DNA of 64,000 bases from contig OZ260663.1 of NCBI GenBank assembly GCA_965285935.1, positions 81,220,001 through 81,284,000 of the forward strand, in the 5' to 3' direction. Positions 11,166 to 54,000 of this stretch are shown here, one piece after another (within the stretch, counting starts at the first letter, position 1; each line of letters starts with the position of its first letter). The position numbers and the translations under genes are program-made. Below the pieces are notes generated by a model. The model worked only from the letters and a program-made list of their open reading frames with translations. It had not been told where the DNA came from and searched no databases. This DNA comes from Ophelia neglecta (lineage: Eukaryota).

Positions 11166-12985
11166 ATGCGCGGCCTTCTGCCGGCAGGCCGCGGTGGAGC
11201 AGGGCCGTCGCGGCAGAAATAACATTGGGGGATCGGTTGGTACCATCGTGCGAGGTATTGCGTTACCTTATATTACATAGGACTATGTAATATAGATTCG
11301 TAAACGTTCGAATAATAATCCTGTTTTGTGTAAGAATATTACATAGGCCTATATATTTATTTGTTGGCGCAAATAATTTAAGAAAAATGAGAATCTATTG
11401 GGAGATAGGCCTTTATAGGTCTATATAGCCTTACATTCCTATATATATATAGACGTTCTTCAACTTTCATATAGAGGCCTATATATTTTAAATTGGCAGA
11501 AAGCAATCACAATCAAGTCGAATTCAAAATTTATCTTCCGAGGGCGTATTTTGATAATGGGCATCTTAAAGGAGGATTTTGTATAACGTATTAAAAGTGC
11601 TCCTTCTTATTTCGAACCAGTGTTATCGTTTCATTTTACCGTACTTAGATACACCGAGTAATCGTCTGCCACCTCGCCAGACGCAGCCTATAGTTTCTCG
11701 ACCTTTTACTGATGAGCGGTACTGGTCGGAGGGTGATGTCTACGCGGATGTGGGGTATAGCTCGCGGCCCAGCACGATGGCGCCATTTCCTGTTTGCAAG
11801 CTGCTCCCACCATTTCGGGGGGTTACAAGACATTTATGGCCGCGGATTAATTGCGCTTCGCCGAACTCGTCCAAAACTAATGTCTTCTTGTAAACAAAAG
11901 GAGAATTAACTCGGAGTAGGAGCAGGAAATTGAGCTAAAACATCAATGGCCTGGCTGACAGGGATTGGGGCGAGGGGCCGGGGAAGCGCTGATGCCCTTA
12001 GCAATATACGAGCGCGCACAGGTGTAACGGAAGACGGGGGCCAGATTTATGCTCGCCCGGCCTCCGGAGTCGGGCAGAAGCGATGTTAGACAGATAATGT
12101 CCTTGTCATAGAGACCAGGAATCATGTCTCGACTGATTCACTCCGGAACCTCGCCTTGTCCGGGCTTAACCAACGTGTAGCTGGCAGCAATTTGTAGGCA
12201 GCCATCCAAGCTTTTACATTTTTTACTTCACTTGTTTAAGACAATATATTCTTGACTCTAGACATTTAAATCTGTTCGATGATGGTCAAGTTATTACCGG
12301 GAGAGTTGAGTCAAATTGTGAAGATTTAGTTGTTTGAATGAAATGAAAGTATAAAAAACCTTCTTACTTACCTTCTTGGTCAAATGACATGACCTATATA
12401 ATGTTTTGATTTTCGTACAATGCTCAGAACAGACAGACACCTTTTTTTGCGTGTTTTCAAACCTATTGGGTAAAATTTCTGTCGAAAGCTTTTCACCTTG
12501 TAGATTTGAATAATCACTGGACAAAATGTGTTTGGCAAGAAACGGTATCATGTGCCTAACATTTTTTGCATTTTCTTGTAATTTACCACAAGAGTAATAA
12601 TTTCTCTGTATTAGAGGTGGTCCAAGTCTTAACAGGCCTAAATGTGCCAATTAAGTGCACTGACACGAGAATTGGCATGAAAGGTTGAGGGCTCTTGTAA
12701 GCAGATTATTACTAATGCTTGAAACATCTGTAAGGTTATATCTACAAAAAAAAAATCCTGGTGTGAAATGGTCATGGAAATGACGACCCCCCCCCCCCCT
12801 CTCTTTCCAGGGTCAATCATTCCTGACTACATACATGTATATACATATATGGCAACTCTGGCTGACCATCAATGGCGCCCTTTCCTCTGCAGTCGACCAG
12901 AACCTAAGAAAAAGTGTAGACAGGAGAGGCAGGGGCGCTAGTAGTGTTTTCGAACGTGAGGTCAGGTGAGGGATGATCTCCCAGT

Positions 12986-14952: not shown

Positions 14953-15079
14953 ATGGACGACGATCCGCTATTCAATCTGGACACTGTCAGGGATTTTATC
15001 ATCTCTCGTGGTGGGAAAATCAGCAACCATCACCTAGTCACTCATTTCAAAACCTTCCTCAATGACCCAAGGAAGAAAG
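14953..15079 (+). CDS. sowah: sowah exon 1 (MDDDPLFNLDTVRDFIISRGGKISNHHLVTHFKTFLNDPRKK)
   Basis: aaacATGG start, donor G|gtgggt phase 1, SOWAH N-terminal domain motif. Confidence 0.9.
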
Positions 15080-24000: not shown

Positions 24001-27000
24001 TTTATTTGCCCTTGATGTTTTCTCTTTTTGATTGATTCTGTCTCCCTTAAACTGCTATAAGGTCATAAGTATGATGGGAATAGGAGGAAGGAAAGTGTAT
24101 TTTGAATTCATCAACACTTCATGTACATCTATGTTTATTACATAAATTTGGAGACCAGTAAAAGTAATATTGTATTGTACATTTCTTGTTCATAAAATAT
24201 CAACATGAAAAAGTTATGATCATTGTTTGTACATAAAAAATACCACTGTAAAAAAGTACATAAAAATGATATACATTAGTGTTTAGTGTGAGCTTCGAGT
24301 TCTTCTGACTAACCCATTAACTAACCCATTAACTTCCTTTACAATTTACAAGCTTATTGTCTCGTAACCCATTGTTTATTGTTGTTTATTATTTAAAGGT
24401 ATGTTTTTTTATTTTTTCTACATTTTTTCAGCCATCACCCAGTAAAGACGACGATGACAATCATTCTCAATCCAGCGTGGCTATCACTGTAAGTGAATAC
24501 TACTAGGCAGCCGCATGTAGCGAAGAAATAAATTGAATATATATTAGTGGCTGGAATTTGAGATAAGGATATGCCGATCTACTTGTGCAATTATATTTTA
24601 TTCATAACTAGCTACATTGCTGAATAGTCTGTTTATATGAAATGTTCATTGCAGAAATCAATTTATCTTTTTTTTCTAGTATTTATTCTCAAAGTGTCAC
24701 TGCCTTTTATATATTAATATTTCGTTTAACTTTCTTCCAGCTGGATGAGACAGAACGTCAATGGATGCTGATCTCGGCTGCAGCTGACTACCAACCAATG
24801 GCTAAACTCCTGCTAACTCACCCGCACCTCATCAAAAGAAAGGTGTGATAATATGTTATAAAAAGCTATATATCGTAGACTCTCCACCACCTGCTCTATT
24901 CTGCACACATGTAGTATTCATTTAGTGACAAATTCACATTCCAAATCACCATTTTCGGGTATATATGTTTGCTAGCAAGTCTTTAAAATGCTCATTATCC
25001 TTATGAAACTCACCAGTTGCGTTGATGGTGTTGCCAGATCTTTGAAAGAAATAAAATTGCAATTCTGACCACTTTGAATGACATCAACAAGCTTTAGAGG
25101 GATATGTGGTCAACCTTCCATTGACATTGTCAGGTACAAATTGAATCTTTTTCACGGGGTGATAAGTGATTTCGACTAACGTTTAAGTCTTCTCACCTGC
25201 TGTCATTGTAGTACACCACAAATATGTGTGTAGCGGAAAATGTGGTCCCCATTATTAGATTTGGTAGCTATGGCCGTGTCGCTAGGTGTGGAGGATCTTT
25301 GTTTGGGGGGGGGACCCTTGGTGGTGTAAAATTAGTATATTTATGTCAGAGATTAGCTTACAATTGCCATAGATCATTGCAAGAGGTGTATTTGCATGTT
25401 TAGTACCTATGACATCCCTCGGAAGTCATTTTAGGTGGCTATAAACCAGATATCATTGGACACCTTAAGCTACGCCAGTCAATGCACCAACACGATTGGG
25501 GCATAATTCCCCATTGGTCGTCTGCCTTTGCCTGATCTAAGTTTAATTTATTTCCTCTCATAATTCAGCCATTTCAATCTTTCAGCATTATGGCAATTTT
25601 GTTTGACTTTTGAAATGGATACAGCCGTTTGTGTTGTGTTCAATAAGCGTGCTTGCTTTTCGCCAGAAACCTAATATGACTTTTATTCTCTTCGCCCCTT
25701 TCATGTGCCGCTGTACTCTTTGTGCCGATGTGCTGTCACATTCAACAGGATTTCATGTCGGTAAGTCGTACTCACCAAATCAATTGTAGCCATTTCATTT
25801 AGAGGTGTGAACTGATACAAGAGAATGACTCGAAGCCATGATGAGGATTTTGTGATTCACCCAAGTCACTTTGTGTTTGCTCGCTCGGCTAAGCTGCCCT
25901 ATTTATGCACGCACAGGCTACTGTTGGCAACACGAACTTTTAAATCAAAATTTAATTTACTATAGATAGCTTACAGCCTGTGGTCATGACTTCAAGCGGA
26001 TAAGGACATGTATGCCTTTAATAAATTATTTATGCTTTCTATGACTCGGAATTTGAAGTCATTGTAGGAGAGTTTTTCACTGAGGGAAACTATCAGACTA
26101 GCGTAGCCAAAGGCAGAGATTTAGTGTGTGAACTGTGCATGATAGCCAAGCAAAACCAATCATTGATTGATTAGGGACAATTAATAAAGACCGCTAATGA
26201 AGGATATTATTGACAAGGCTTAATTATCATTTGTTAACCAGAGAAGCATTATAGAAAGCACTTCTCCCAGGGACAGGTTAATTTTGTTTCACTTTAAAAG
26301 CTTAATAGAGTGTTTAATTCAGGCAGTAATTTGAGCTGTCAAGAGGCAGGCCTGCTATTTTCAGCTGCATAATAAGAGCTCAATTATGCATTTAACCAAG
26401 CTGCAGGCATTGCAAGCATTCCTCCCAGTTGTCTCATTCACCCTTTAACCAGAACAATGGCTAGGGCTTTTTGTTTGCTTATAATCATTGACCATTCCAA
26501 TGAACAATTTAACTACAAATACACACGCAAAGATATCTGCTTTGATTATGGCCAGTAATGTGATTTGACCATTGTTCTAATTGTTTTCTGTTTTCTTTCC
26601 TTGCCCCTCCTACTGTGCCGTTGTCCTGCCTGGGATTTGATGGCTTCCCTGCCCTACCATCGTCTGACCTGCCTCAATGAAGGGGGTAAGTCATAGCTCT
26701 GCTTAATTACCTCTAAGTGCTTAATTATAACTTATCCCTCAGAAGCATTGCCGGAGATTTGAATCGCTATCAATCATCGGCCGCCATTGTTTTGCCGCTG
26801 TGCCCTGTCAGTGATTTCATATCTGGTGAAAGGGGAGAAAATAATCACATAATTTCATGCTCGGAGCATGTTACCGAGCCGAGCCTGCAGACGGGAAAGT
26901 GGCGGGCTGAAATGTTAGCCAAGACGAGCATTGTCGCCCTGACACAGCTTATGTTTTTGATCAATGTAATTAAGGGGCGATTTTGTTGTGTGCCTTTTAA

Positions 27001-30000
27001 GAAGCACTCTCTTACAGATTGATTTTCAGCTGACGCGTCAATATTGGTGTGCTAATATTCTCTTTAATGGATGTAGAAATCAATGATACTTCCACCTCCC
27101 CACCTCATTTACATGTTCTAGGATTTGTCTGGCATAATTTTGACGGACTATAGGCTAGTGAATGTTGGTCAGTCTTTGTGCCGAGTACGGTATGATAATG
27201 AAAGAAACTGTTTCTATTCTCGATGTCTACTTTAACAAAGTGGGTGGCGTTCGAAAAGCAAAAGTGTCGCCGCGGTGGCCACAGACTTTACAATCGCCCG
27301 GCCGAAATCAATAATGTTTGAAAGCCTAGTTGTAAACATGTGTATTCAAATATGAAATACTGCTAGGAATAATATTCAATTAACTGCCTCACAACGGCAA
27401 TGGAGACTGATTACATTGGGAATCTGTGCTCTCCAAACAATACACGTGTCAGACCACGTCCGGAACACAACAATTTGGAGTCGATCCACCCCGGCCGTTT
27501 GCTTATTGATTGCCGAGTAATATCGCCGATCACTTTTCACGGGGAAAATACAATAATTTAGAGGCTTAGAGTAATATGCGCTCATCAATATGCATACAGT
27601 GTGTGCCTTTTATCATCGCAGATTGCATGCAGTGTCGGGGCGATTTGGACTATAACAGGATTACTCGGTAGATTTGGCCCGATATATTGTGCTAACACTT
27701 TGTGCTCTAGAAGCCGATGCCTGTCAGACTTGGTCAGAATACTACCTAGAGCTGTTCTGGCCTTGTTAAGCTTGGCTAAACCCCTCCCCAATGATATTTG
27801 AGAAATAAAACGTTGGTGTCAGAGGTGTCACTACCCAAGTGAGTTGACTGGATGAGTGGGGAGTTAAGATCCCCGATCTCCACTGCCACTAAGTCCACAT
27901 TATGATATATTGGGTCGCCCGTTAGGGCATTCTGAGGGTGACAGATCGCGCCCACAGATATGAAGGGGGATCTGGAGATTTGACAATAACCAATAAACCC
28001 TCCATATTGCTCAGCCACTGGAATGACAATCAGCTATCTAATTGATATCCATTCACTGCCCACCTGACCTCCGTCTGACAATACACGACAGACACCAGCT
28101 CAATCTGGGACTGATCAAACACATAACTCACTGACAGACACCAACTCGATCTTACACAAATCAACCAAACACCATCCTCCTTGAAGAAATCAAAATATCA
28201 CGTCTGCTGCTCTTTGTCTCAAAAGCCTATTAAATTCCTTTTGTTTGATTGAATATGTATTTTTGTAGTTATAAGTAGACCAATGGTATTTTAATAATGA
28301 AAAGATATGTTTGACAATAATATTTTGCATGAATATGTAGTTTCTTGATATATAAATGTTAATAGCTACTCTCATTGTGTCTATTACTTATTTCCCACCA
28401 TGTTGCTGCCTCTTGTGCCTGTGCTGTGATGTGCTGCCACCTGGTAACCTAACTGTGCATAACTTCTGTGGCCATTCACTCAACCTACAGTTTGTAAGTA
28501 TCTATCTCATTATTTGTCTAACAGCTAACAGTAGACTGGTAGTTGCAAATGGAAATATGTAATATTCCACACCAATATAATACTATGAGTTGGTATTTGG
28601 TTTTTATTCAGCATAGTAACATCTTATCATTAATAAAAAAAGCTCTTTCATGTCAGTTTTATATGAAGATAAGGTTTGAAAATCTAAACATGTCATATGA
28701 AGTTCTTAATGGTGGTATCGTTGTTGACATGTATATAAATCATGTAGAAGTAAGTATGAAGTGTATCTCCAGATGTTTCACACATCTTCACTGGTGTGTT
28801 GGACTGGAGGACAGGATTTTGACAAGGGTGGGTTTCTTTACATCACAGGAAGGGTATGAGATGGGTACCCCCTCCCTGAGGAGAGTCTGGTAGCCTAAGA
28901 CCCCCTCCTGGGACAGGGCACACATCCCTCTCCCTGGGGAAACCCGAGAGGCGGGAGGAATTTATAGAAAGAAAAAAGGGGCCCCTGACCTTCCTGTGTC
29001 TCTCTAAATTTGTCCTGACCCCCCTGCCCCCTCCTAAATGTGCCAGTATCAATATCCAAACCTTCAAGTGGAGGTTTAACTTGTTGGTGAACTTGTTAGA
29101 TAGCAGATGCCTTGTGTATGTCAGCACTAGCGTTTTATCCAAACGTAGATTGTCATGTTTGTGTCTAGGCATTCTGTCATCGCCATCTCTTAGCCCGCTC
29201 TCTTACACGGAATTACAAAATCTTCTCCGGATTTGATTTCCCAACAAATAGCTGACATTCTGCCCTCCACCGTCTCAAGTCAGCAAAACTGGCAACAATG
29301 GCAAAAGTGTCCGACAACAGCCCGGTGTATTGGCCCATCTTTTATCGCCATTGGAGTAAGGGCACTATCAGCGTGGATGTAGCAGTATATTCCCCCAGGG
29401 AGAGCCTTATCAGTTTTTCGATTTGTATTGTATAAGAAGTGCGGTGATCTTGAGAGAAAGGTGGTGTTTGGGGACATGAAGCAGACTGGATGATGTACAT
29501 GTAAGAAGCTGTTTAATGGCGGGGTAGTGGTGGTTGCTTGTAGTTTTGGGCTGTTGACATTGGTCTTCATGTCTGTCAGCTCCGCCGAGACACACTGTTT
29601 GTGTTTATACAGACAGTGTTTATCTAGTGGGTAATTAGAATAAACCCGCCAAGCCTCCAGTTTGAGATGGAGTTTGAGATGGGAGTCCTCGAGCCTGCCT
29701 CAAGCCTGCCTGGGCCGTGTGGCTGATATTACCCTCTTCCCCTAAGTGTTTTCCAACCCTAGGTGTTGGTTTATTTGGTGAAGACTTTACAGGTTTTCTT
29801 GCCATGTTTACTCGCCCTGTTTTATGGCTCCATCGGCAGTTTAGTTATCAGGCGGTTGGCACTAAAATGGAGAGCCTCCAACCTGCCGATTGCTAGTACC
29901 TGTTGAGTGAAATATGTGAGAAAACCTGAATGTTAATTGTAGAATGTGGCAGAGGAGTAAGATTAAACAAGCCAACCAAGAAAAAAATGAATTAAGATAA

Positions 30001-33000
30001 CACCATGAACCTATGACATTAAAATAGATATCTTTACTTGTTTGACATTTCATTCTGAAAGTTTTGACGCCTCAAAAAAAAGTACAGATGGATCTTATCC
30101 ATTTGTTGAATGGTCATAGATAGGAATAAACTGTATGTTTAGTTTTATAGTGAGTCATACAGATTGTATCATCCATTTGTTGAATGGTAATAGATAGGAA
30201 TAAACTGTATATTAAGTTTTAAAGTAAGTTATTGCCTATATCATCACCCTTTACCCCTGAAGGCAGATCTTAACTTGTGCTGGCCTATGTTATTCAACAG
30301 ATGACAGTGTGGATCGCCAGTGGTTCCAAGTGCCTTAGCTATTCAATCAATTATCAGGCTTAGTGTCCAAGTCCACAGATCTGCTTCATGGACGGGAATG
30401 TTGCCCGTGGGCCAGAATAGTTCCAGCCTTTGATGTTCGGTGGAGATTGATCCGGCCGATCATCACTCACTTTTATGTATGCGCAAATATATAACCGAAA
30501 TACTCTGGGTGGTTGCGGCTACATGCTAAATCCTGCTTATTGAGATTGAGGCTGGGCTTGTAGAATGCGACATCAAAGCAGGTTTAGCCATCAAACAAGC
30601 CCGGAGACATGTTTAGTTGGCACAAACTAGCATATCCTTCATGCTGCACATCTATACAGGCCGAACGATGTTTGGCGGCGGGATTAGGGAGGCGACCCCT
30701 ACGTTAAGTCCGTGTACGCTGTGTGCTCAGTGGCCGATAGCTAGCCGATGGCCACTCGCCGACGACATGGTCCGGACCTGATAAGCCATTTTGTCAGACA
30801 CCCATAATCTTGCGAGGCATTTTGACAGGTGAGAGGGGCGCAATCCTCTTAGGTAGGGCAGCTGAAGTGGAGCCAGCAATATGTGATCAGATAATTAAAA
30901 CATGGGTGATTGGCACCCCCACAGGACAGTGAGTCACCGGCCACAGTGTAGGCCCAAACTCCAACTGACCAAATACAGCTAAACAATATGAACACTAGCA
31001 AAAGCAATCTATCTGATGAGATTTGGACACGCCTTGTTTGGTTACAGCTGCATTGTCATCATTAACTGTGAGATAAATCAGCTTAGATCGGCAGTTTACA
31101 TGAAAGATGCATTTTTATGAAAATTTGTCATTTTTCACTGCAGTTGAATGTAGTTATCAGAGCCTGACTTGATTTCTGTCAGTGACAGTGTCGGTGATTG
31201 CTTTGAGATGATCTCTGATTCCATTAGAGAATGAAGGATGTGCTGCTCGTTTGACCTTTGCCGGCAGGTCGGTCAGTGTGAAGCTATGATGGCTGTCAAA
31301 TCACTGTCCAGCGTCCACCATTGTTCAGATAGTGCAGTCTATTGTTTCAGATAAATTCTGCAGATTGTAACTGTTTGGATTAGGATATTGAGTATTCTAG
31401 GCTGGCAGTTCATCTGAATGAGCAAATTTATACAACTGATTAGCCACATGTAACAACAGCATAAATACCGTAGAAACCAGATGAAGGTTTTCACATGACT
31501 TGCTCTGCGGTGTGTCCCCCTATTTACTTTTCAACCGGACACACATTTCTGCTGTTGTAGTTATGCATGAAATTGCTATATTGGGCAAGTATTTCTTGGG
31601 GAGGTCATGGTAAAATCACGATGTTAAGTTGAGCATGGGGTCTTGGCCGGTCCCCTGGGTGTCGGGGCTGTCAGTCAGAGACGCCACACCACTGACTGAC
31701 AACTGTCAGAGCATGCCATTTGCATATCACAAGTCAATCATCATCGCCATGGCAACGGGTCAGAGTCTCATGGCAATGTTTACCGGGTAGATATGAGTCT
31801 GGATGCTTGAGTTAACCTGGTGAAACCCGAAGCTGATATTGTGGGGTGCGATATGCCGTTCTGGGTGTCCTGTCCGTTCTGGGTGTCCTGCCCGGGGCTG
31901 AGGGGGTTTGTAATGGGGCTAATAACAAGTGGGTGGGAGTCAACTCCTAGACAGCGTCTAAATCTGGCTGCATGCAAAAACCATCAACATTGTAGCTAGC
32001 ATGTACCCTCGTCATGATATATTAGGCTAATTAGACTGATTGCCTTCCGCCTTTTGTAAATATATCAGTCGAGTTGAGATCATTAAATGTTCCCCTGTTA
32101 TGCGGTGATAAGCAGACCTGGGCTCGGCAAGAACATTTATATACTTGTATATTTATTTAATCTTGTTTATGAACTATTACAGAAGCAAGTGCAAAACATG
32201 GCTGTCAATTAATTAGAGTGACATATTAAGCCAATGCCCTGTAATCCAGGGCTGGCATTGTGTGCTAGTTGGAATTAATTTAATAGTGTCAGTCTCGTAG
32301 TCAGTCAAGCATTTTTTGCTGGCACCTGGAGTTTGTAATGTTCTACAGGGCTATGCATAACAAACTGCATGTTGCCATTACTCCCTGAGAGTTTATTTTT
32401 TATGAAATTCAGCCAGATACATGTATATACATGTATTCCTACTCTTAGCATTCATTGAGGTAATGAGGCCATATTTCAGGGAGTGATAGGTCCTGCTGTA
32501 TCCTGTTCTTTCTGATGTAGCATCCTCAGTTCCTGCCTGCTCCATTGTCTCATGTCAAAATGAGCCATTTTCATGTAAATCCACTTCAACTTCAAAGATA
32601 TTCATATTTGATTGATGAAATATCATATTTGTGATCTAGGCTGTTGCTTGGAACCCTCTGTCTATAGTGCTGGGAGTTTTTGCCAGGAGTCTTGGATGCC
32701 AGGATGTTACAGTTGGGAGTTTGTTGTTTGGGGGCTGATATTCAGGCCCTCCGCTGGGTGCTGATACCCGTTTGGGGCCGTCGGCTGGGGGTGGGTGCCG
32801 ACACCAGTGGATGGTGAGGCCTATTTACCGCGGTGTTTGTCCCCCTTGTCATCACCAATAGGAAGTGTAAATCAGTAACAGCCATCCCTAAGCCGTACTA
32901 CTTAGGCGGGGAGGGACGGCGGTGTGTTCCTGAGAATCAATAGGAGCTGGCGATTTAGGGGGACACATGGCGGGGATATTGGGCCAGCTTTTCTCAGGGA

Positions 33001-36000
33001 TTAGTCCCACACTTTGAGGGATTACTTTGTGTAGAGAGACAATTTGGAGGCGGCAATCGGGCCAAAAAGGCCCCTCGTCGTCAATTTGGTGGCCACGTTC
33101 TCCCAGATCCTGCCTAATCCTCAAAACACAGTTATGAAAACCAAATTTATTAAATCAGAGTTTAGCAGTGCGGGGGCCATGTGAGGGCACGCAAGAAATA
33201 AGCCGGGAGTCATTGAGCCCGGGTGTCGGGCCGGGCCAGAGCCCGAGTGTCAGGCACTGCCCGGGTCATCTCTTCCACTCCATTGGCCAGCTAATTAGTT
33301 GAATGATATCAAGGGAGGAGGAATATTCCACAGATTAGATTGTAATTTGCAGGCAGCCATGAGAATACTAATTTGCACATGCAATTCAACGGAGTGCTCA
33401 CAATTAACATTAAATCTGGTGTAGGTAGCGGGGGGGGGCAAGCTGCACATTGTTCATTTCGTTCATAATTTTGCAGACGCTTTGCATAATCAGATTTCGT
33501 GCCACTGATACTGCCGAGCAGGCCACATTAATAGGAGATCACATGGGTCGGTAATGGGACTTGAAGAAATGGATGGCTCCTTCTTGGGCCTCTTCACATG
33601 TTTGAACAGCTCTTCTCTGATTCATTAAACAAAACGAGGCAATTGGAACAATTGACTGACGTGTTCTCGGTCCCTAACTACTTACACGGAGGACAAGTCA
33701 TCACAGACGCTGATTTCGGTTCTCGGTGCTCGTTCACCAGAAACCAATCTCATTGCATTTCAATTTGCCAATACACAACAGATTGGTATTAATGCAAGTT
33801 TGTCTTCTAATTAATCCATAAAGAGGCTTTTGGTTTTGTTTAATGAAAAGTAAGCGAGAGTGGTGCTCGGGTAGCTTGGGTTTCCAGTTGATAAGACAAA
33901 TGAAGTTAATGGTGATAGAACAGGAGCCTGCTTCTAGATAAACATTTTGTTTGCCATTGTGCGCTCGGCTTCTGCCAAAGGGGTATTAATGACGCCTTGG
34001 TGGAGCTGCTCTTTTGTTGATTAAGTCTAAATGGCATTGAGAAGAGGCGTAGTTGTTCAAGACTGCCAGGCCATCACCCAGATTACTTGTTCCTGGCACA
34101 GCCATGAGAATCACGGAACGGATCTAATGTTGCAAAGTGGCATTGAGTGATGTCACCTAACCACCTAAGCAAATAAAGGAATCTAAGCGATGTCATTATC
34201 TTATTCACCCGGCATTGGCATTACCACTTCTCTGACTGATTCAATTGATGAACAAAGTAAATTGTGGAATAACTGGGTTAGGAGTGTGGCCTGATAGAAG
34301 CTAGAGTCGGCTGCAGAGGTGTGAGCCGCAAATTGATCACATCAGGAAATGAAAGGCTGTCGGCGATTCTGTTAAACAATATGATGTGCTCCCGGGCTAA
34401 TAGGGGGAGCATAAGTCCCTTGCTTGTATGGGAATCTCTTCCAATTGATAAAAAAATGACCGCTGACATTGAATTGGACAATGTCGATCATTGGACGGTA
34501 TGCTTGTCTTTATATGGTCGTGGTGGGCTGGGCTGGGGAGAAATTGAAAGTGAGGTTGTTTTTCGGATTGCAAGCCCAGAACCTCTGGGCTGATGTAAAT
34601 TCTGTACTACTTCAGTATCGCCCTTGGTCGATGTATGACCGCGCTAGCCATGGGCTATGTCATCTTAATCTAGACGATGGTCCACTAAATGGCTGTATGA
34701 ATAATCTGAGGCTGACCCCAGGTCTGAAGTTAACAACGTGTAAAAGTAGATATAGAGGTGATGTGTGGAATTTGGGCCTGATTGTGACTGGCAGCAGTCT
34801 GAATGTTTGGATACCGCAGAGCAGGCTTTCTGGGGTAACTTGGCCACCTGATGGCATTGTAAACATGACGTGGGAGCAGTCCAGGCTGGTAAAGTGTGCT
34901 GTCCAATAAGACTCAGGGGTGGGGGGACCCTCAACACCCTGGCCGGCTCATTGATCATGGTCAGGCCTCCTTTCACACCTTACTCACACCTCTATTACCT
35001 ATGTGGCTAGTGAAAAGAGATAGTCACACCAGCGATTTCATCTCTCTTCTAACATGACAGTAGTTTAATGCTAGAAGCTATCTCGTTCTTCATTGCCAAA
35101 TATGATTGATTTTTGCTGGTGGTAAAACATGAGAAATCGCGGTATTAATGAACGCTGAAGTTTTAAATAAGAAATGAGAGCACATCCTTGTCTTCAATTA
35201 ATATGCCACATAGATCTGTGTAGTTTTATCGAGAACATTAATCACAATGTCTTGAAAAATTAAAGCTTGTCAGTTGGTGTAGATGTTGGGATATTCGTAG
35301 CCCAGGGCCACTTACGAGTGGCAAGGGGACGGTCTTCCTAGCATGTAGCCATGTAAGATTTATGTCTGAACATGTATAACCCCCACTAGTCTGCTAACCT
35401 CTCCCCAACTCAGTCACACCTCCCCTGATGTGTTCTGACAGCCTCCCAATGAAGATGGAAGATGCTCGTTCTCTCTCTGCCCTTTTCCTTCCAGCCATGC
35501 CTGTTTTACACCAAAGATCAACATGCATCGACACCACCGTCCGAGATAAGTCCACTATACTCTCTCCGTGTCAAACTTGACAAATAAATGTGGTGATTTG
35601 CATTTAGAATTGGCGTTTTGATATTATTATTAGCCAGATAACAGTTGATGCCCTTTACGATGGCCTCTTGGAAATAAACACTTCTATGATGAAGAAGAGA
35701 AATGGGAGGGAGTTTCTCTCAAACTGTCAGTTTTACCTGAGGGCCGTTTGTAAAGGTGAACTGTTGATATTTACCGCTCTGTTGCAGCATGGCCGAAAAA
35801 TGTAACCAGAAGTAGTGAAGAGACAGAATTCTGGATTTATGGCGAAAGACAGTGGCAGTTTGAAATTAGCAGGGCAATGTATAGTAGAAGCATGTACATG
35901 GGGTGCAGGGTGATTTCTGTGGCCAGTGACTGGCGATAGTTGAGTGTGTGGAGTCTGACACATTGAGTGGCCCCCTCTGACAGGGACCGCCTGACAGGGA

Positions 36001-45000: not shown

Positions 45001-48000
45001 CTAACCATGTTTCTAGCCATCTCCTGGATTGTATCTGGCAGATGGAGAGGAGAATGTGTGCTATGCATTCTGCATTTAATACCTTTGTCACATTGAATTC
45101 CCTTCATTATATCAAATCTCTTATAACATTTTGTTACTAGTATACTTTTAGAGGCTTGGGTCACATAAAAATTGTTATTTCACTACTTTAACAAGTATGG
45201 GCATATTTTGTGAAATATCTGTAGATATTAATTTATAATGTTAATATGAATTCTTGATGAAAATGAATGAAGTTTTATTAGGTAAATGATGTCTTTTATT
45301 GATGACAGGCCTGTATATATCTTTGACTTTCTTTCCTCCCTTGATGTAGTTCTTGTCCCATCTCTGTTGTAGAACTTTAGTGTTGGAAATTCACACCGGG
45401 TGGTTACAGTCCCGGCAATGTTAGGGAAAAATTCCACCGCTATATCCTGTTGATCTCATTCAACTAATATGATGTTAGCATTGAGCAAGCTGTCAAGCCG
45501 GGGTGTGCCTGTATATCTTAGATGTTAATTTAATTTGCAGAACTTAAAGACTTGCGTAGCCCTTTGACACCTTGATTAACTTCTTAATTCAGCTGGGTCT
45601 CGGTGCCAATCAGCTCGGCTTGTCAGAAAAAAACCTCGGCGGCAGCGACATTGATCAAGATATGAGGAACTCGGCGTGGCGTTGTAAAACACCGCCGCCG
45701 AATTCATTTGGTATTCATGATAGCCGTGCACAATCATCCATTTGAAAAGATGATGACTTAGTATGGCTTAGTTATGATTGACATTCTAATAAAAGGCATG
45801 TTGAAGCTGACTTGTGAAATTGTGGTTAATCCCGGTATTACAAGAGAGGGGTTCTTGGTACCCAGCGCAGGTTTGCCCAAATCCGTCTGGGGTTATTCAT
45901 GTTAATACCCATCTAACTCTTGGAGATGAAATTAATCAAATATTGGTTCTAATATGTCAATGTGTCAAATTGCATTATATAAGCCTGTTTGGGATTTCAT
46001 GTCAGCTGCGTTTTTAGTTGGGCCGGCGGTTTTTTCCTACTGTTTAATTTCTTTGAATTACGGTGGAATGGAGTCTCGGGTTAGTTGTAAAAAGTATCTT
46101 GATTTGAAAGTGACGGGTCTTAATCCAAACTGATCAAATTATTTCCAGCATTGATTATAGTTTAATTATCTGATATGAATGATTTCTTCTATTTCAGTTG
46201 GTCAATGAATCTTCCTCATTGTGCCACCAAGTATTGTTCTGACATTTAATGTAATCTCTCGGGCTGCTCCATTCAGAGTTTCTTCTGAGCCCCGCCTTAC
46301 AAACATCCGTTTTTAGAAGCATTGTGTACTGCTGGCTGCCAGTTAATATACCCCTTTAGTGGGATTAAATGGCGTCGGCTGTGGGGCCATTGAGAGAGAA
46401 AAAAGGCAGACATGTACACACCTATGGCTATGAAAGCAGCACATTTTTTCTCCATTTTTGTTTTGTACCCCTTCTCTGATGTCCCTGTTCAAATGCCTTG
46501 AATTTGAAAGGAATAGTAGAAAAGATAAAATGAAAATAATTTTTGTTTGTTTAAGGTTACAGTTTGGGATATGATAAAGTGATACTGCTGGTTAACATAA
46601 TTATATTTATTTTTTCAGACTGCACTCCACTGGGCAGCTAAGCATGGTAAACTGGAAGTGGTCAAACTGCTGTGTGGAACAACGGGGGCCGGAGTTAACG
46701 TGAGATCGGTGAGTAGTATGGGGACCAATGCCACTCCCTGGTCTGTTTTGTACCTCAGGTTTTATATGAACACAAATGTGCTGAAGTAGAATGATTCTCA
46801 GTGGTGCTGCCCGCTTTAACTGTTGTGATCTGTCAGTTGAATAAACCACACATATGAAATGAGACTGTGTCATTTGAAGCCGACCTCCTCCCCATCTCTG
46901 GCTAAAGAGTGCAAGCCATGAGGAGGGTCAACTTCAAGGGTCACAGAGTCAGATTATGACTCGTGGCCTCCTCAGAGGGCAGTCCCACTGATAAAAGTTC
47001 TAACCTATATTAAATGAAGACTCCAAACACGAGAAAAAGGTGACAGAAAACAGGGGGGCGATTCTTGGGTCTAGTAATTAGTTGTACTACGACTACTACG
47101 TACTATATCCATGGGGTTTTCTGTCCAATACCAAAGTGCAGATTGTTATATAACAATAGCACATTTACTATTGCTTTTGCAACATTTTAGACAAAACTAT
47201 TTTAACTCTTTGTAGAACCAGGTGTATTGAAGTTCTGTTGTTAAAGAATTGGTTGTAGGTTGGTTGTAAACAGTTTAATAGGTTGTTAATTAATAAGTTA
47301 TGATCTACCTAATAGTTATACAAGTTATTATTGACACAGTTATTATTATTAATGTTTTAGAAGTACTGTTTATATGACTGTTGGCTTGTAATAGGAGGTA
47401 CATCTTATATATGAAAGAATGAAAAATAAACACTGTTCTTCAGATTAGAAATTAACAATTAAATACTAGATGTATGGATATCATAATTATACATGTGCAT
47501 AATGGTATTCTATATTTTGTAAATATATTGAAATCTCAAGAATGGTTTATTCTCAAACTATATCCAGTAAAAAGGAAATACTAGAGTAAGTTATCAATGA
47601 GGAACCCTAATTATGTGTCTCTAGTCTTGTCCAGCTGACGGTGGATTAATCATAATCATATCAAATGTCCCAGAATTCATTACAAGCTCCAACACTTTTA
47701 AACAAAACAATTTGGTCAGGATAATAGTTGACCCATATTGGTAATTTTGTTGTGCATATCAATGCACAATAAATTATTCCTTGATTAAGATGCATATGGG
47801 CTGTTGTCAGTTTATGGGGCTGAATCACACAGGGATGAACACCAGTTTATCACAATAATTATCTTAAGGAGTTTGCAATCATGTAAGTGGACACATAGGA
47901 CAAATAAATCTAAAATGGACGCCCCGGACAGTTGACGGTGGAGATGAGCGTGGCGTTGCCTCCCACCATTGATCAAATCCATAAACATGTTCAGTCTGGG

Positions 48001-51000
48001 CTTCTAAAGGCTTATGATGTGCGGTGCACTCAGTCGAGAGGTCTACAATCATCAAAGCTACTCGGACAAGCTCAGATGCACATTCTACCAAAAGGAGATA
48101 GCGATTTCATTCCCCTTTTTGTGTCAGTACACAGCGAGTAAGCGGCATCAATAACATAATTATGTTGAGAAATCAGCTCGGAACGATGAAGTTTATTAAA
48201 TTCATGCTCGAGCAGGGGAAGTGTGGTCACGCGTTAACATTCATTTTGAGCTTCGGCCCCAATCGCTGCGCACTGCACTGCATATGGAAATTAAAAAGGA
48301 AGAGAGCCTCTTGCCGGCAATGGGAGAGGACCAAGCGTGAAATATGGAATGTCCGTCTCTTGTGAAGTGTGTCACATGGTGTGTACCCCAGTCAAATCCA
48401 GCGCATCCAAACTTAAAGATTAGACATTTTTCATTAAGGCTGATATGCTGGCGAAAGAATACAGAGTGACGTGGGCTGGTGAATTGGTTGTATGAATTGC
48501 GCAGCTATTACTAATCTTTCTTGTTTGGTTTCCAATGCGATCTGTCTTTGTTGCCTTTTTATCCACCCGGAACAAGCTTTCGGCTCAATGTCCGCAGGAT
48601 CGCACCAGTTTTTGTCACTGCGGCAAACTTTTGATGAGGTTCACTAGTCTGTGAGCTTTGCGTCTGCTAGCAAGATTAATGTAGATATCATATCTAATGT
48701 GTCCAGTCGTAATGGAGGGTGACTTACTGGAATTGACTTAATGGCTAAAAAACAGATATTGGGTAGGAAGCACGGTGGCCTATGAAATGGGTTTTTGCCT
48801 GTATGATCTAAGGGTGTATCATTACTCGGTTAAGGTTGAGCTCGCTTCATTCCCGATACAAGCCGGCTGGCTGTAATAGCCACTCGTAGTAGGCTTCTCA
48901 ATCAGTCTCACATGGGCACTCGATAGCCAAGAGCGGCAATCCCAGCCCTGCTTGTCAAAGATATTGAAAACCCTTGTCGAAATTGTAGGCATTGTCCTCT
49001 CTGCATTGCTGCCTTGTTAAATTGATTACTGGAGGAGACTTAGAAACAGCTTCGGCAATGTGTCTTGTTTTTGTGCAAGCTGAAAGTTACACTTGCCTAA
49101 ACATGTCTTTCGATCATTTACATTCGCAAATAGGGGTTCTTTTAGGTCTGCGACACAAGAACGATGTGTTTCATTTGGAAAAGTATCCATAAAACCAGTG
49201 TATGCCATTTTATCGTCAGCCAGGTGAATTCTAAATGCCCGGCTGGGAATAAAACCAGGATTTGGCATTAGGCAAAGAGCCGTGGAATGGAATAAAATGG
49301 AGATTTGGCATTAGGTAAAAGGCGGCCGATTGCATTGGGGGAGCAGAAGGTCTGCCCAGAATAATCATATAGTTAAGTCTGGCTTTGTATCTGCGAATCA
49401 GCACGTGGCCCCACTGAGGGACATAAGACAATTTGTGTCCTGACAATTGCACATCTCTGGGCCAGGCTCCAGTGACCAGAGTAATCCCATCAGTTATCAA
49501 CTCTCAAATACACTGCTCCTTCAATGCGAGCGAGTAATGAGTCGCAGCGATTCTGCTATAATCTAGCCTATTAAATTCCTCTAAGCAGGATGTCGGACAG
49601 AGAATTACATTGTCCGATGAAGAAAACTGCGGAAGTTATGTCTCCCAACTGCCATCAGTACATGGGACTGCAATTGGCAAGATAATATTCAAAGAATTAA
49701 CAAATGTTTAAGTGGCTTGGTATTGCCGATAGTTGGGCCCTGAATGGCGTCTTAATCTGAGGGGCCCAGATGCGCAGCGCTTGTGGCCTTTCACGTGTCA
49801 TTGATCATGTAGGGCTAATGGCTGTTACGGCCTCACCTTGAGCCACGGCTGAGGAAATGAACAGCCATGTTCGCTCGGCACAAACAAAGTCCCCATCACA
49901 TGTTCTGAGCCGCTATCAAAGTGGCCTCGACATTTGTCAGACGTTGAAAATAGTCCGGAAATGGAGCTTGGCTCCTACCACGCTAAAACCTGTCATTGTT
50001 GGTCTCCGCTGGAGAAAGTCTGCCACATCTCGGTAACTCAAGCAAATTTGTACAAAATGGCACAAAAAAAGTTATCGTTAGCCTACAGTGGATGTGTCTA
50101 GAGCAATCCACAAGGTTTATGATGTCTTAAAACAAAGAAAAAGCACCTCCATGAAATTACATGCCAGCCTCCCATTCTGATATTGTGGTTAATTCCCCAG
50201 TCCCTGGCAATGTCGAGATCGCAGATACCCAATCATGTAAATTACTGTCAGTTTTACCTCAGCACTATTCATTACTGTTATGTAAATTAAATTTGGATGT
50301 GTTTATAGGGCAGTTTATTTAGCAGTACAAATTTACATATCTATGAGGAGAAACAGTCGCGCGATGGGATTAAGTTCACTTAAGTTGCCAGCATGTTTAG
50401 TAAACTGATGTCTTCATAATTGTCAGGTGGCGTTTAAGATTGTCACTTTAAATGTGTTACATCAGAACGTGTCAGTCGAGCTGTCAACCCTGGCATTGCT
50501 CCATGACTCCAGCGACAAGTGATATGCAAAACCAGTCATTAACATCCCGCTGAATCAGGGATAAAATCACAATATGGTCCATCGGTGGGTGGACCTTGGC
50601 GGCCCCGGGGAAATTCCTTTGTGCCCAGATTGTCTCAGATATATTCATGATGAAAAATGGCTTGAAAAGTGAGCCGGTGTATTACACCATCATAACACAA
50701 GGGCCTCGGCAGATGGGAGTTTGTTAGGCTTGTTGTTGACAAATCTGACAAGGTAATGGTGAAACTAACCATGTACCTCTCGCCGAATGTCTCCAAAAAT
50801 CTTGTTTTGTCTGCGTGTTGGGGGAGGGGGGAAGATGCTACAGCTGATAAATAAAGCTAGGCATCTTCATAACAAAAGCATTTTCCATAGATAACAAGAG
50901 ATAGTCAGGGTTTTATTTTTGGAGGGCCACTAAGTGTATACAATTCAAATAAGAATATTGGCACTATTGTTCATTTAACACTGGTATTAGAGGGTCGTAA

Positions 51001-54000
51001 TCCACTTTTTATTTGCCCGGTTTGGCCATTTTCACGGAGGCAGCCTGGGTATTGAGACTCTAATAGGATATTCAACACACACTTGCCTGGCTCAGCGGGA
51101 CGAAATACAATGCTGAACGGTCAAGTTGATTATTCTACTTGATTTCACACAAATGAAAATATTTTGAGAGGCATTATTTGGCAGCAGTGGGTGAGAGGGC
51201 AGTTGGGTATTATCCTGGCCTACAATGGCTAAGGGTTTAATTGGAATCGTTTGGTGGAGTGGGGGACCCTGCTGGGAACCTGCCTCTCCTAATCATGCCA
51301 CCATCAGAATTAGCCAAACACTGTGTTGGTGCTCACTGGGCGGTGAACTGTTTGCAGATTTCTGAACCCTGGCTTGTTAGATTGCTTATTTAAGTAAATT
51401 GACTGTTGTAAACAATAGTGTATCCAGTAGAATCCACAACTTATGTCTGTCAGTGTAGCTACATGTATGTAAACATAGCAGAAATACTATTCAAGTCAAG
51501 GTCTAGACTGTTTCAATACCCTGTGTTTAGTTCTATTAAATTCTAATAAATATATATAATGATTTTTTTTTTTTTTCATGTTCTGCTGATATGTCTGGTT
51601 GTGCCTGACAGCATGTGAGTATTTAACCAGTAAACAGTTCATAAAGGTTTGCGAGCCAAGTGGAAATAGAGGAAAGGGGATGACTGCTTGGAGTTATACT
51701 GTTTAATACACATGTATAATATGTGCCTTGTTGATAAAGAATTTAATACTTTTATAATTACATAAATACTTATCATTTATATCTCTAATCTGACACTATA
51801 TATTATTTTTGATAGATATTATTTTCATATCAAAGTCAATAAAATATGTGTTTTTTTCCACTTATTCGGCAAGTGGCACTTATTTGACCGAAGTTACACC
51901 ATCAAAGACTATAACCTGCAGATGTAATTTAGCCAATCCATTTCATGCTATTGATTTTATATTACGCCATTTTGCACCAGTGCCGCTAGACGGGTAAACT
52001 CAATTGAACTACTATCTCAAAATCATGGTTTCATCCAAAAACCACTATTGTGAATCGAATCTCCTGATCTTTTTCTGAGAGCTTCAATTCAGCATTTTTC
52101 CGTTATGAGAATCATGAGGTCAGTGAGAAGAGAAGATATTGACATTTCTCGCCGTTGATTTCCAGGCAAATCTGCGAGTTTCTGTCCTAAATCCTATCAG
52201 TTCCAGTTGTCTGGCTTTCAAGTCTCCTGGAAGCATTCATCAGTGTTTTGTATTTGTAAATCAGGTTGGAAACCGGTGTCTTTCTCATAAAACCTCATCT
52301 CCTTCATGCTCAACAGAGATTGGGCACCGGGGCAGAATGTGCGATAGTCGCAACTAAAAATTACATGAAACTGCAATTATTACTGGTTGTAAACATTCCA
52401 CTCATAGAATGTGCTGTCTTGTATCTTTTTCATATTGTCGCCCATTGTGCTGGTTGCTGAAATGGATGGTTGCCTTAGGGGGTAAGTGAAATTTCATCTA
52501 TAGCTCCGTTGTCACGTTCCTAATGATATTATTGGCCGATAGAAATGACAGATCATCACAGCCAATTATTACAGATTTCTCATGCATATGAAACGGTGAT
52601 ACCCCGGGCCCCGGCCACATCGACCAGCCATCACCGAGGGATAAAAAAAGATATTGAATGTCACTCACTGTCGGGGGAGGTTGGGGCCAGCGATAATGTA
52701 AAGGGCTTGGTCACAGGGCACTCTACATTCACCCATTCTGGCAGCCATTGTCTGCCCTTGGGCATCTGGGGCGGAGACTGGGCTCGGGTCGTGGACTCCA
52801 CGGCCTCCGAGGAAGCCCAGGAAATGAAGGCTCTGTGCCCAACACCTTCGCTCGAGTCGCGGGCAAAATTCGTTTCCTGTAGAACATGTGTAGGGAACGG
52901 AGCAATTTGCATCTCAACAAATGAAACTCGGACTCATCAGCAATAATCATGATTTAATGAGAGCTCTGCTGGCAAGTCCAAGATGAATGGGACATTACTG
53001 CTCTGGAGGAGGTGTGAAAATCTTGCCATTTCACTGCAGAATATTTCCATTAATTACCCAACTGTTCTGGTAGGGGGAGCCATACATGTCTTAACAAGGC
53101 TGCGTAAATCAAGGTGAGAAGCGGAGTGTGAGTCACCTAGACCCAGGCCCCTTCACTTCCACCGGCATTCTCTCCCCGGTTTGATTCATAATGCCATTCC
53201 TCCACAAGAGCTCTCCAGACCTCAAGCCCCCCACCTTTGATGCCGGATTGGTTATTAATTAAAATTAAAATCTCCAATGCTTTGATGAAAAGCCTCTGCC
53301 GCTAATGGGATTGAAAACAGTCGATAAATAGATGTTGATTGTTTTGGAGATATTGGTGTGGGTGGCCAGTGTGATGTTAATGGCCCCGTTTAACATAGTA
53401 GTAGACTTGGATGGTAATCACGATGATCTCTGGATAAACAGAACCAGGGTGGTCCGTCTGCAATTCAATAAGCTCTAATACACTTGATCAAATCTCATTT
53501 CATTTATTATTTATTAATTATAACCGCACAGAAGCTGTTGTACCGTAATGCTTCTAATAATGAACAGAAGCTGTTGTACCGTAATGCATCTAATGATTGC
53601 ACCATGTATAAATTCATACACTTTAGATTCATATCATTTTAATTATTGTTTTACCTATATTAATTTAACCCATCTAGTTATCCAAGTAACAAACATTTCT
53701 AATCGACCAGTAATAATTAATTGTTATTAACCTTAGTAGGTAGGTAATAATTAGTGCTATGACTGAGCACTGTCTGGGTGAAGGCAGGATACCCCATTAC
53801 AGTCAAGTCTATTTTTATTTGAAGATAAAACATGTTATTATAGTATAGTGAAGAGATTAATATAAAAGAATAACTCAAGACATTGGGAACAGAAATCACC
53901 AATTTCCAATATTTGTCTGCTAATAGGATTTGATAGAATAAAGAGTAATGTTCAGTTGCCTGCAATTTAGTTGCTTGCCATGATTTCTAGCTGAAACTTT

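What the first reader, a model, noticed from the sequence alone, without database searches (positions are those of the whole stretch)
25665..52478. Shared upstream splicing signature at all five microexons: long AG-free zone plus TGTGCY/TGC motifs
Seen: each microexon acceptor is preceded by about 70-125 nt with no AG, a distal pyrimidine tract, mostly a CTAAY branch-like site (about 25671, 26577, 28449, 51543) and TGTGC(C/T) copies (25704, 25721, 25729; 26614; 28414, 28420, 28430; 51600; 52410, 52446). The normal-sized exons have plain poly-T acceptors instead. Known: UGC motifs upstream of the 3' splice site are the enhancer for SRRM4/SRRM3 (eMIC domain)-dependent neural microexons. Inference: the full ankyrin fold may be made only in neurons or eMIC-expressing cells, making splicing a tissue switch for Sowah function.
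Basis: partly seen in the sequence, partly recalled or inferred. Interest (0 to 1): 0.75.

Follow-up and report, generated by a model that had tools for sequence, protein, structure and literature searches.

The report
Sowah single-codon exons share splicing signature
Five tiny coding exons (one of 12 bases, four of only 3 bases) that complete the ankyrin repeats of a Sowah gene all carry the same unusual upstream intron layout known from neuron-type microexons, but nothing yet shows that they are used only in neurons.

Summary
Every coordinate fits. The AG-free zones upstream of the five microexons are 80, 125, 123, 79 and 69 nt, against 17-44 nt at 8 normal acceptors of the same gene. TGC is the most enriched of all 64 trinucleotides there (23 seen, 7.2 expected).

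In a blind scan of 144 kb on both strands, 207 sites fit AG-N(1-30)-GTRAGT. The rule "AG-free zone of 60 nt or more plus at least 2 TGC" picks exactly these five.

The exons are real. cDNA-like SOWAH sequences of other animals carry the encoded residues (24 of 24, and 55 of 55 cluster members). Genome-derived models usually lack exactly two of them (13 of 15).

The layout (CTAAY, distal pyrimidine tract, UGC spacer, weak proximal tract, consensus donor) matches the published code of eMIC (SRRM3/4, Srrm234)-dependent exons. This genome has an SRRM_C match.

The neuron-only switch is untested. No RNA runs exist for this species. No skipped form was seen among the assembled cDNAs. Tetrapod retrogenes keep the residues. 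The TGC excess does not exceed dinucleotide-preserving shuffles.

My verdict: real, ancient microexons with an eMIC-type acceptor. Inclusion is probably near-obligatory. The same stretch was also noted elsewhere in this scan.

The parts
24741..24842 (+). Normal exon C (34 codons, ends ..HLIKRK, donor GTGTGA); the exon before the first microexon chain
   Evidence: Sequence. 56% identical to Owenia SOWAH P0070/P0241 in exon-wise blastp. Its acceptor has a 44-nt AG-free zone, 2 TGC and no TGTGCY.
25667..25746 (+). 80-nt AG-free zone upstream of microexon 1: CTAAT at 25671, a pyrimidine tract, then TGTGCY at 25704, 25721 and 25729; the last TGC ends 13 nt before the AG
25749..25760 (+). Microexon 1, 12 nt, GATTTCATGTCG = D-F-M-S, phase 0, donor GTAAGT
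   Evidence: Orthologs have D-F-x-x at this place.
26556..26680 (+). 125-nt AG-free zone upstream of microexon 2: CTAAT at 26577, a 12-nt pyrimidine run, 5 TGC; the last TGC ends 8 nt before the AG
26683..26685 (+). Microexon 2, 3 nt, GGG = Gly (ankyrin profile position 2), donor GTAAGT
   Evidence: This Gly is at least 90% conserved in alignment A1.
28366..28488 (+). 123-nt AG-free zone upstream of microexon 3: 7 TGC including TGTGCY at 28414, 28420 and 28430; CTAAC at 28449
28491..28493 (+). Microexon 3, 3 nt, TTT = Phe (an aromatic residue, Y or F, in orthologs), donor GTAAGT
46619..46708 (+). Normal exon D (30 codons, TALHWAAKHG...VNVRS), donor GTGAGT
   Evidence: Sequence. Matches Pfam Ank at 33.1 bits, profile positions 4-31 of 33. 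Single copy in the genome.
51531..51609 (+). 79-nt AG-free zone upstream of microexon 4: CTAAT at 51543, a T15 tract, 2 TGC (TGTGCC at 51600); the last TGC ends 5 nt before the AG
51612..51614 (+). Microexon 4, 3 nt, CAT = His (a variable residue in orthologs: H, N, L, Y, F, R), donor GTGAGT
52408..52476 (+). 69-nt AG-free zone upstream of microexon 5: 4 TGC (TGTGCT at 52410 and 52446), no CTAAY; the last TGC ends 3 nt before the AG
52479..52481 (+). Microexon 5, 3 nt, GGG = Gly, donor GTAAGT
   Evidence: This Gly is at least 90% conserved in alignment A1.
62447..62519 (+). Normal exon E (GYTPLHLAAMQGHEDVIEILVNAY plus 1 nt), donor GTGAGT
   Evidence: Sequence. Matches Pfam Ank at 33 bits, profile positions 2-23. 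Its AG-free zone is 22 nt.
14953..24488 (+). Upstream normal exons of the same gene, used as controls: A 14953-15079, A2 17321-17382, B 17612-18358, B2 20932-21042, B3 24432-24488
   Evidence: Sequences. phmmer with exon A finds SOWAH proteins. The acceptors of A2, B, B2 and B3 have AG-free zones of 32, 28, 17 and 31 nt.

Best explanation
The five sites are genuine, ancient coding microexons of a Sowah (SOWAH-family) gene. The shared upstream layout is the device by which the spliceosome finds them.

Shown:
- Each exon has a distal branch-site-like CTAAY (4 of 5) and a distal pyrimidine tract.
- A long AG-free spacer rich in UGC runs up to a weak proximal acceptor.
- A consensus GTAAGT or GTGAGT donor follows directly after the 3 or 12 exon bases.

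Inferred mechanism. With only 3 nt between acceptor and donor, factors at the two sites would clash. The branch site and pyrimidine tract are therefore pushed 30-100 nt upstream. A UGC-binding SR-related activator of the SRRM3/4 or Srrm234 eMIC type most likely recruits SF1 and U2AF to this weak acceptor, while the strong donor holds U1.

Inferred output. Inclusion is near-obligatory wherever Sowah mRNA is made, not an on/off neuron switch. The encoded Gly, aromatic and x-Gly residues are the conserved junctions of the ankyrin repeats, and they are present in every cDNA seen.
For: Signature. It is confirmed and is a strong outlier. The only four AG-NNN-GTRAGT sites on the + strand of the window are these four exons. 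They lie in the right introns, in the right order, and encode G, F, H and G.

Position in the repeat. Pfam Ank starts at profile position 4 in exon D and position 2 in exon E, so the microexons supply the repeat junctions.

Orthologs. 24 of 24 cDNA-like SOWAH sequences have G-Y/F before TALHW and 32 residues up to GYTPLH. 13 of 15 genome-derived or unnamed models have 30. Haliotis rubra has NFTNGY and RTHG where H. cracherodii has NFTN and RT. Read-through models show the donors (N then V-S in Mytilus).

Match to the eMIC code. PMC8797185 section 10 gives the code. Passages of bioRxiv 10.1101/2024.09.17.613571 report a UGC between branch point and AG in 57 of 73 and 51 of 71 dependent microexons.

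Regulator. SRRM_C matches in this genome at 31.9 and 32.9 bits, above the cut-off of 27.
Against: - No RNA of this species could be examined. The three runs found are DNA.
- The TGC excess is not beyond dinucleotide-preserving shuffles (mean 21.6 against 23 seen, P = 0.34).
- Microexon 4 has only 2 TGC, and microexon 5 has no CTAAY.
- The SRRM_C match covers profile positions 13-55 of 67 in one exon only. That this Pfam family equals the eMIC domain is recalled, not tested.
- A 6-nt microexon candidate elsewhere in this genome also has a 70-nt AG-free zone, so zone length may go with exon size and not with eMIC.
- No skipped isoform was seen, so there is no sign of regulation at all.
Confidence: 0.55

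Rival explanations
1. The microexons are strictly eMIC-dependent and are included only in neurons or other eMIC-expressing cells. Elsewhere the Sowah ankyrin domain lacks 6 + 2 residues, so splicing acts as a tissue switch.
For: The layout is the same as the published eMIC code, which the authors call largely unique to eMIC regulation. In nonvertebrate bilaterians the eMIC is restricted to neurons (abstract and passages). All five exons are multiples of 3 in phase 0, so skipping keeps the reading frame. RefSeq isoforms differ by single residues at the G and aromatic exons in 4 species.
Against: 55 of 55 cluster members with both anchors, and 24 of 24 cDNA-like sequences, include all the residues. 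No skipped form was seen, although contigs drop rare variants. Tetrapod intronless SOWAH proteins carry DFMSGF and HGG. A heritable retrocopy must come from germline or early-embryo mRNA, so inclusion was not neuron-only there (inference; retrogene status from the passage). The one-residue RefSeq isoforms may be aligner artefacts: Ciona has DFISG and DFISY but no DFISGY.
Confidence: 0.2
2. Constitutive microexons that do not depend on eMIC. The long AG-free zone and distal branch site are a purely steric and kinetic solution for ultra-short exons, read by general factors (U2AF, SF1, U1 partners such as PRP40 or RBM25). The TGC excess is a by-product of a G-poor, AG-free, pyrimidine-rich composition.
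For: Dinucleotide-preserving shuffles reproduce the TGC count. Another microexon candidate of 6 nt in this genome has a 70-nt AG-free zone, while a 39-nt candidate has 34 nt. Passages of bioRxiv 10.64898/2026.09.14.751627 describe microexon activation by PRP-40 and RBM-25 in an animal without an eMIC, and the steric problem of short exons. No skipped isoform was found.
Against: [quoted passage not shown] Constitutive microexons are reported to have stronger 3' splice sites (passage), whereas these have weak proximal tracts. TGC ranks first of 64 trinucleotides, and TGTGCY occurs 10 times against 0.65 expected.
Confidence: 0.23
3. The sites are not exons. They are chance AG...GT pairs, or recursive splice sites that leave nothing in the mRNA.
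For: No transcript of this species was seen. About 4 AG-NNN-GTRAGT sites are expected by chance in 128 kb of sequence (my arithmetic), and 5 were found.
Against: Four of the 5 sites are on the gene's strand, in the right introns and order, with the right codons and extreme AG-free zones. Orthologous cDNAs contain the residues. The AG and GT are 3 nt apart and not adjacent, so no donor is rebuilt at the joint as recursive splicing requires.
Confidence: 0.02

Closest known systems
eMIC-dependent (SRRM4/SRRM3, invertebrate Srrm234) neural microexons
   Same: Exon size of 27 nt or less and frame-preserving. Long AG exclusion zone. UGC close to the 3' splice site, between the pyrimidine tract and the AG. 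Weak proximal acceptor. CUAAY branch sites. Strong donor, as in mammals.
   Different: Neural or eMIC dependence is untested here. Four of the exons sit at the extreme 3-nt limit and come in tandem chains. The encoded residues are core conserved positions present in every cDNA seen, which suggests obligatory rather than switch-like use.
Recursive splice sites and RS-exons in long introns
   Same: An acceptor and a consensus GTAAGT donor sit almost on top of each other inside very long introns (18 kb and 10 kb). Stepwise removal of the introns is likely.
   Different: Three coding bases stay in the mRNA. The bases after the AG are GGG, TTT and CAT, so no donor is regenerated.
Conserved constitutive microexon clusters missed by annotation (described in plants; recalled, no call)
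   Same: Very short coding exons in chains inside a conserved domain, systematically lost from automatic gene models.
   Different: This is an animal gene with an SRRM-type intronic code.
The c-src N1-type steric problem of short exons (Black 1991, seen only as cited in the passage)
   Same: The exon is too short for simultaneous occupation of both splice sites, so intronic elements must compensate.
   Different: N1 is 18 nt and neuron-specific by known regulators. Here the exons are 3 nt and their regulation is unknown.

Membership tests
eMIC (SRRM3/4, Srrm234)-dependent microexon | Very short, frame-preserving cassette exon | tested here: met
   Lengths are 12, 3, 3, 3 and 3 nt, all in phase 0.
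eMIC (SRRM3/4, Srrm234)-dependent microexon | UGC motif close to the 3' splice site, downstream of the branch site and pyrimidine tract | tested here: met
   There are 2-7 TGC in each AG-free zone. The last one ends 13, 8, 30, 5 and 3 nt before the AG. TGC is the top-ranked of 64 trinucleotides. It does not exceed dinucleotide-preserving shuffles (P = 0.34).
eMIC (SRRM3/4, Srrm234)-dependent microexon | Long AG exclusion zone with a distal branch site (CUAAY) and a weak proximal acceptor | tested here: met
   AG-free zones are 69-125 nt against 17-44 nt at normal acceptors. CTAAY is present at 4 of 5. The proximal pyrimidine fraction is 0.50-0.65 against 0.70-0.85.
eMIC (SRRM3/4, Srrm234)-dependent microexon | An eMIC-bearing regulator is encoded in the genome | tested here: inconclusive
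   PF15230 SRRM_C matches one exon on another contig at 31.9 and 32.9 bits, above the cut-off of 27, over profile positions 13-55 of 67. The rest of the domain was not found in the 1.6 kb downstream. That SRRM_C equals the eMIC domain is recalled.
eMIC (SRRM3/4, Srrm234)-dependent microexon | Inclusion needs the eMIC domain and is enriched in neurons | not testable with these tools
   Only DNA runs exist for this species. The supplements listing eMIC targets are closed. Assembled cDNAs of other animals show inclusion only.
SOWAH (Sosondowah) ankyrin-repeat gene | N-terminal SOWAHA-C winged-helix domain | tested here: met
   Exon A alone gives no Pfam hit. phmmer with it finds 100 proteins, and the long ones carry PF25877 and SOWAH names.
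SOWAH (Sosondowah) ankyrin-repeat gene | Ankyrin repeats with the TALHWAAKHG and GYTPLH anchors, then RDYSGKKA.QYL | tested here: met
   Exons D and E match Pfam Ank. Exon F lies in L002. Alignment A1 shows the anchors.
SOWAH (Sosondowah) ankyrin-repeat gene | Linkage to an Iroquois-type homeobox gene | tested here: met
   A TALE homeobox ORF lies on the - strand at 4117-4572 (Homeobox_KN, 65.3 bits). Calling it Iroquois rests on recalled motifs and on the synteny described in the passage.
Recursive splice site | AG directly followed by GTAAGT, so that a donor is rebuilt and nothing is left in the mRNA | tested here: not met
   Three or 12 coding bases lie between the AG and the GT.

The most novel reading that the evidence does not exclude
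A bilaterian-old set of single-codon exons builds the repeat junctions of the Sowah ankyrin domain, and it is under Srrm234-eMIC control. The binding surface of Sowah would then be completed only in eMIC-expressing cells. The exons would have been kept apart for over 500 million years because the introns between them hold Iroquois enhancers. This would be the shortest and most clustered regulated exon set known, and a direct link between a regulatory block and a splicing switch.
Probability: 0.2. Interest if true: 0.8.

Novelty: new member of a known kind. Interest (0 to 1): 0.6.

Why it matters
Exons of 3 nt are at the physical limit of exon recognition. This gene has four of them, in two tandem chains. 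Each carries the full intronic code that has been described for eMIC-dependent microexons.

That makes it a compact natural test bed with one direct question: does the UGC and long AG-free architecture act through Srrm234, or is it a general answer to the steric problem of ultra-short exons?

There is also a practical point. Most genome-derived SOWAH models in public databases lack exactly the residues these exons encode (13 of 15 with both anchors). Annotation pipelines therefore lose single-codon exons systematically. The signature found here separated 5 true sites from 202 decoys in 144 kb, so it could be used to recover such exons.

Tried and rejected
RNA evidence. The look-up of sequencing runs with exon B gave 3 runs of one sample. 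Read laying on 46560-52550 showed even cover of the introns, so these are DNA runs. It showed no joints and nothing about splicing. The 31 polymorphic places listed include none inside the two AG-free zones of that stretch, but only about 0.8 would be expected, so this means nothing. The bin holding exon D had zero depth, most likely from the tool's silent filter. I do not count this as a finding.

Only protein-level traces were available.

The place of the residues in the repeat rests on Pfam profile coordinates and alignment A1.

Pfam on exons A, B, C and F gave no family.

The second half of the SRRM_C domain was not found in the 1.6 kb after the match.

Papers. No paper in the held library contains both 'sowah' and 'microexon'. 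None of the 12 listed contains 'sowah'. One search found nothing on tandem or consecutive microexons. Maeso et al. 2012 is not held. The supplements of PMC8797185, which may list sowah among eMIC targets, are closed.

Dropped rows. The row 'A?' used a wrong coordinate and was dropped. From, 5 of 23 models without the first anchor and 3 without the second anchor are left out of the 13-of-15 count. Five of those 23 (P0038, P0042, P0059, P0062, P0096) have no named source. Calling a sequence 'cDNA-like' is my inference from contig lengths of about 1.2-4 kb or transcriptome-type sources.

I did not scan the metagenome or genome collections for exon D patterns, because hits could be mammalian or human SOWAH retrogenes.

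The joined step was left out. Every search used single exons.

Full report
WHAT IS THERE

The window holds a TALE homeobox gene on the minus strand. Its ORF at 4117-4572 matches Homeobox_KN at 65.3 bits. On the plus strand lies a single-copy Sowah-type gene.

I defined the Sowah exons one by one from sequence and homology:

| Exon | Coordinates |
|---|---|
| A | 14953-15079 |
| A2 | 17321-17382 |
| B | 17612-18358 |
| B2 | 20932-21042 |
| B3 | 24432-24488 |
| C | 24741-24842 |
| D | 46619-46708 |
| E | 62447-62519 |
| F | just beyond the window, in L002 at 3956 onward |

phmmer with exon A found 100 proteins. A second search named the long ones as SOWAH proteins carrying PF25877. I never joined the exons into a spliced model.

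THE MICROEXONS

Between C and D lie GATTTCATGTCG (25749-25760), GGG (26683-26685) and TTT (28491-28493). Between D and E lie CAT (51612-51614) and GGG (52479-52481).

Each has an AG acceptor and a GTAAGT donor (GTGAGT once), and all are in phase 0. They encode D-F-M-S, G and F, then H and G.

Pfam's Ank profile begins at position 4 in exon D and at position 2 in exon E. The microexons therefore supply the repeat junctions.

ARE THEY REAL?

No RNA of this species was available. The only three runs found are DNA. Three indirect lines agree.

- Site count. AG-NNN-GTRAGT occurs five times in the 64 kb on both strands. The four on the plus strand are exactly these sites, in the right introns and order, with fitting codons. 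The fifth, on the minus strand, has a 17-nt AG-free zone and no TGC.
- cDNA against genome models. 24 of 24 cDNA-like SOWAH sequences of other animals have G followed by Y or F before TALHW, and 32 residues from that T to the G of GYTPLH. Of 15 genome-derived or unnamed models with both anchors, 13 have 30 residues. Eleven of the 13 with a named genome source have 30. Haliotis rubra has NFTNGY and RTHG where H. cracherodii has NFTN and RT. Among 101 listed members of ten clusters, 62 have the first anchor. 56 of these carry the G-aromatic pair, and 55 of 55 with both anchors have the 32 spacing. The six without the pair are all Mytilus genome models.
- Read-through models. These show the donors. 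Mytilus edulis reads ..TRS, N, then V-S, which is how GTnAGy translates.

The same pattern appears in gastropods, bivalves, a cephalopod, beetles, Ciona and teleosts. The chains are therefore old.

THE SIGNATURE

- AG-free zones are 80, 125, 123, 79 and 69 nt. At eight normal acceptors of the gene they are 32, 28, 17, 31, 44, 37, 22 and 36 nt (U = 40, p = 0.0008).
- Of 2,891 AGs on the gene's plus strand, 1.4% have 69 or more AG-free nt before them.
- TGC counts in the last 100 nt are 5, 5, 7, 2 and 4, against 1, 0, 0, 0, 2, 1, 1 and 1. The background is 1.52 per 100 nt.
- TGTGCY occurs 10 times, against 0.65 expected and 0 at the normal acceptors.
- In a test without a prior hypothesis, TGC is the most enriched of 64 trinucleotides (23 against 7.2, P = 2e-6), followed by CTG and CCT.
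- The last 20 nt before the AG are poor in pyrimidines (0.50-0.65, runs of 3-4 nt), against 0.70-0.85 with runs of 5-10 nt at normal exons. The longest pyrimidine run lies 32-92 nt upstream.
- Across 144 kb on both strands, 207 sites fit AG-N(1-30)-GTRAGT. Six have an AG-free zone of 60 nt or more, and the five with at least 2 TGC are the five microexons.

Results against the signature:

- Dinucleotide-preserving shuffles of the five stretches give 21.6 TGC on average (P = 0.34). Mononucleotide shuffles give 8.8, and 0 of 2000 reach 23. The TGC excess therefore cannot be separated from the TG- and GC-rich, AG-free composition.
- Microexon 4 has only 2 TGC.
- Microexon 5 has no CTAAY.

COMPARISON WITH WHAT IS KNOWN

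Section 10 of PMC8797185, read whole, lists for eMIC-dependent exons: long AG exclusion zones, UGC near the 3' splice site, longer pyrimidine tracts, strong CUAAY branch sites and very weak 3' splice regions. [quoted passage not shown]

Passages of bioRxiv 10.1101/2024.09.17.613571 place a UGC between branch point and AG in 57 of 73 and 51 of 71 dependent microexons. They add that the motif helps but is not strictly needed, and that donor strength matters.

Passages of PMC8797185 say the eMIC arose in bilaterian ancestors and is restricted to neurons in nonvertebrates by processing of Srrm234.

This genome has one exon matching Pfam SRRM_C above the cut-off (31.9 and 32.9 bits against 27). That this family covers the eMIC domain is my recollection.

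The layout is thus a point-by-point fit to the known code. I file the sites as working like eMIC-type microexons. The defining test, dependence on the eMIC, could not be run.

THE TISSUE SWITCH

- No skipped form appears among the assembled cDNA-like sequences, although contigs drop rare variants and their tissues are unknown.
- Tetrapod SOWAH genes are retrogenes (passage of PMC5803294, citing Maeso et al. 2012, which I could not read). Their proteins keep DFMSGF and HGG before YTPLH. The retro-copied mRNA therefore carried all five inserts, and it must have been made in germline or early-embryo cells. This is an inference.
- RefSeq isoforms that differ by one residue at the G and aromatic exons exist in Photinus, Belonocnema, Ciona and Bradysia. 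Ciona has DFISG and DFISY but no DFISGY, which points to an aligner artefact rather than regulated skipping.
- A 6-nt microexon candidate noted elsewhere in this genome also has a 70-nt AG-free zone, and a 39-nt candidate has 34 nt. Zone length may therefore go with exon size. Both are unverified notes, and there are only two of them.
- Passages of bioRxiv 10.64898/2026.09.14.751627 show that microexons can be activated without an eMIC, by PRP-40 and RBM-25. They also report that constitutive microexons have stronger splice sites. The weak acceptors here argue against a plain constitutive class.

VERDICT

- Odds that the five sites are real microexons: about 0.97.
- Odds that the upstream layout is their recognition device: about 0.85.
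- Odds that it acts through an eMIC-type activator: about 0.5.
- Odds that it makes a neuron-only switch: about 0.2.

The class is known. The Sowah case, with four single-codon exons in two chains, seems not to be in print in the held library. Supplements and subscription papers were not visible.

Noticed in passing
Proteins P0049, P0095, P0105, P0111, P0112, P0114-P0116, P0120, P0146 and others: Public genome-derived SOWAH models of molluscs and a beetle lack exactly the two plus two residues encoded by the 3-nt exons. This is a systematic annotation loss of single-codon exons. cDNA-like sequences and Haliotis rubra RefSeq have the residues.
   Followed up: yes
Proteins P0219, P0220, P0140 (Photinus); P0233, P0158 (Belonocnema); P0181, P0238 (Ciona); P0228, P0229 (Bradysia); RefSeq isoforms differ by one residue at the Gly or aromatic exon (for example DPFTAY, DPFTA, DPFTY). 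This is either true single-exon skipping or an artefact of aligning 3-nt exons. It was not resolved.
   Followed up: partly
Protein P0225 (Photinus, transcript-derived): A partly spliced transcript keeps the intron before the 'A' exon but has A, Y and TVLHW joined. The retained stretch translates with 4 Cys (TGY codons) in 27 codons. This hints that downstream introns are removed first, and that TGY-rich sequence precedes the exon in a beetle too.
   Followed up: no
Proteins P0070 and P0241 (Owenia fusiformis): Two models of one gene. One reads DFTSGY then TALHW. The other reads DFTSGF then GEKKGICKIDTE and ends. The second may be an alternative terminal exon that truncates the protein before the ankyrin repeats.
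   Followed up: no
window 1831-7127 (- strand) and L008 about 9300-9700: A TALE homeobox gene (Homeobox_KN, 65.3 bits) sits next to Sowah, and the mirror image of a second such homeobox ORF lies about 130 kb downstream. The arrangement is homeobox gene, Sowah, homeobox gene, as in the known Iroquois-Sowah block.
   Followed up: partly
window about 26000-27700 (the introns between microexons 1, 2 and 3): Dense AT-rich TAAT/ATTA-type motifs and long stop-free stretches in a non-coding intron. These could be conserved regulatory elements of the neighbouring homeobox gene. Not tested.
   Followed up: no
window 10000-11300: A GC-rich (0.545) stretch between the two genes, with repeated ORF-like units. 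Probably a tandem repeat or promoter island.
   Followed up: no
L004 1804-2850: A long minisatellite. A repeat unit of about 16 codons is readable in two frames over about 1 kb.
   Followed up: no
A 39-nt candidate has a 34-nt zone and no TGC.
   Followed up: partly
window 46560-46759: Zero contig depth over exon D in all three DNA runs, while the flanks are covered.
   Followed up: no
L012 1501-1629 (G000 contig 12): An exon matching SRRM_C ends in ..RRRITR followed by a stop that overlaps an AG|GTAA donor-like site. The rest of the domain must lie in a further exon, consistent with an alternatively processed Srrm234 3' end.
   Followed up: partly
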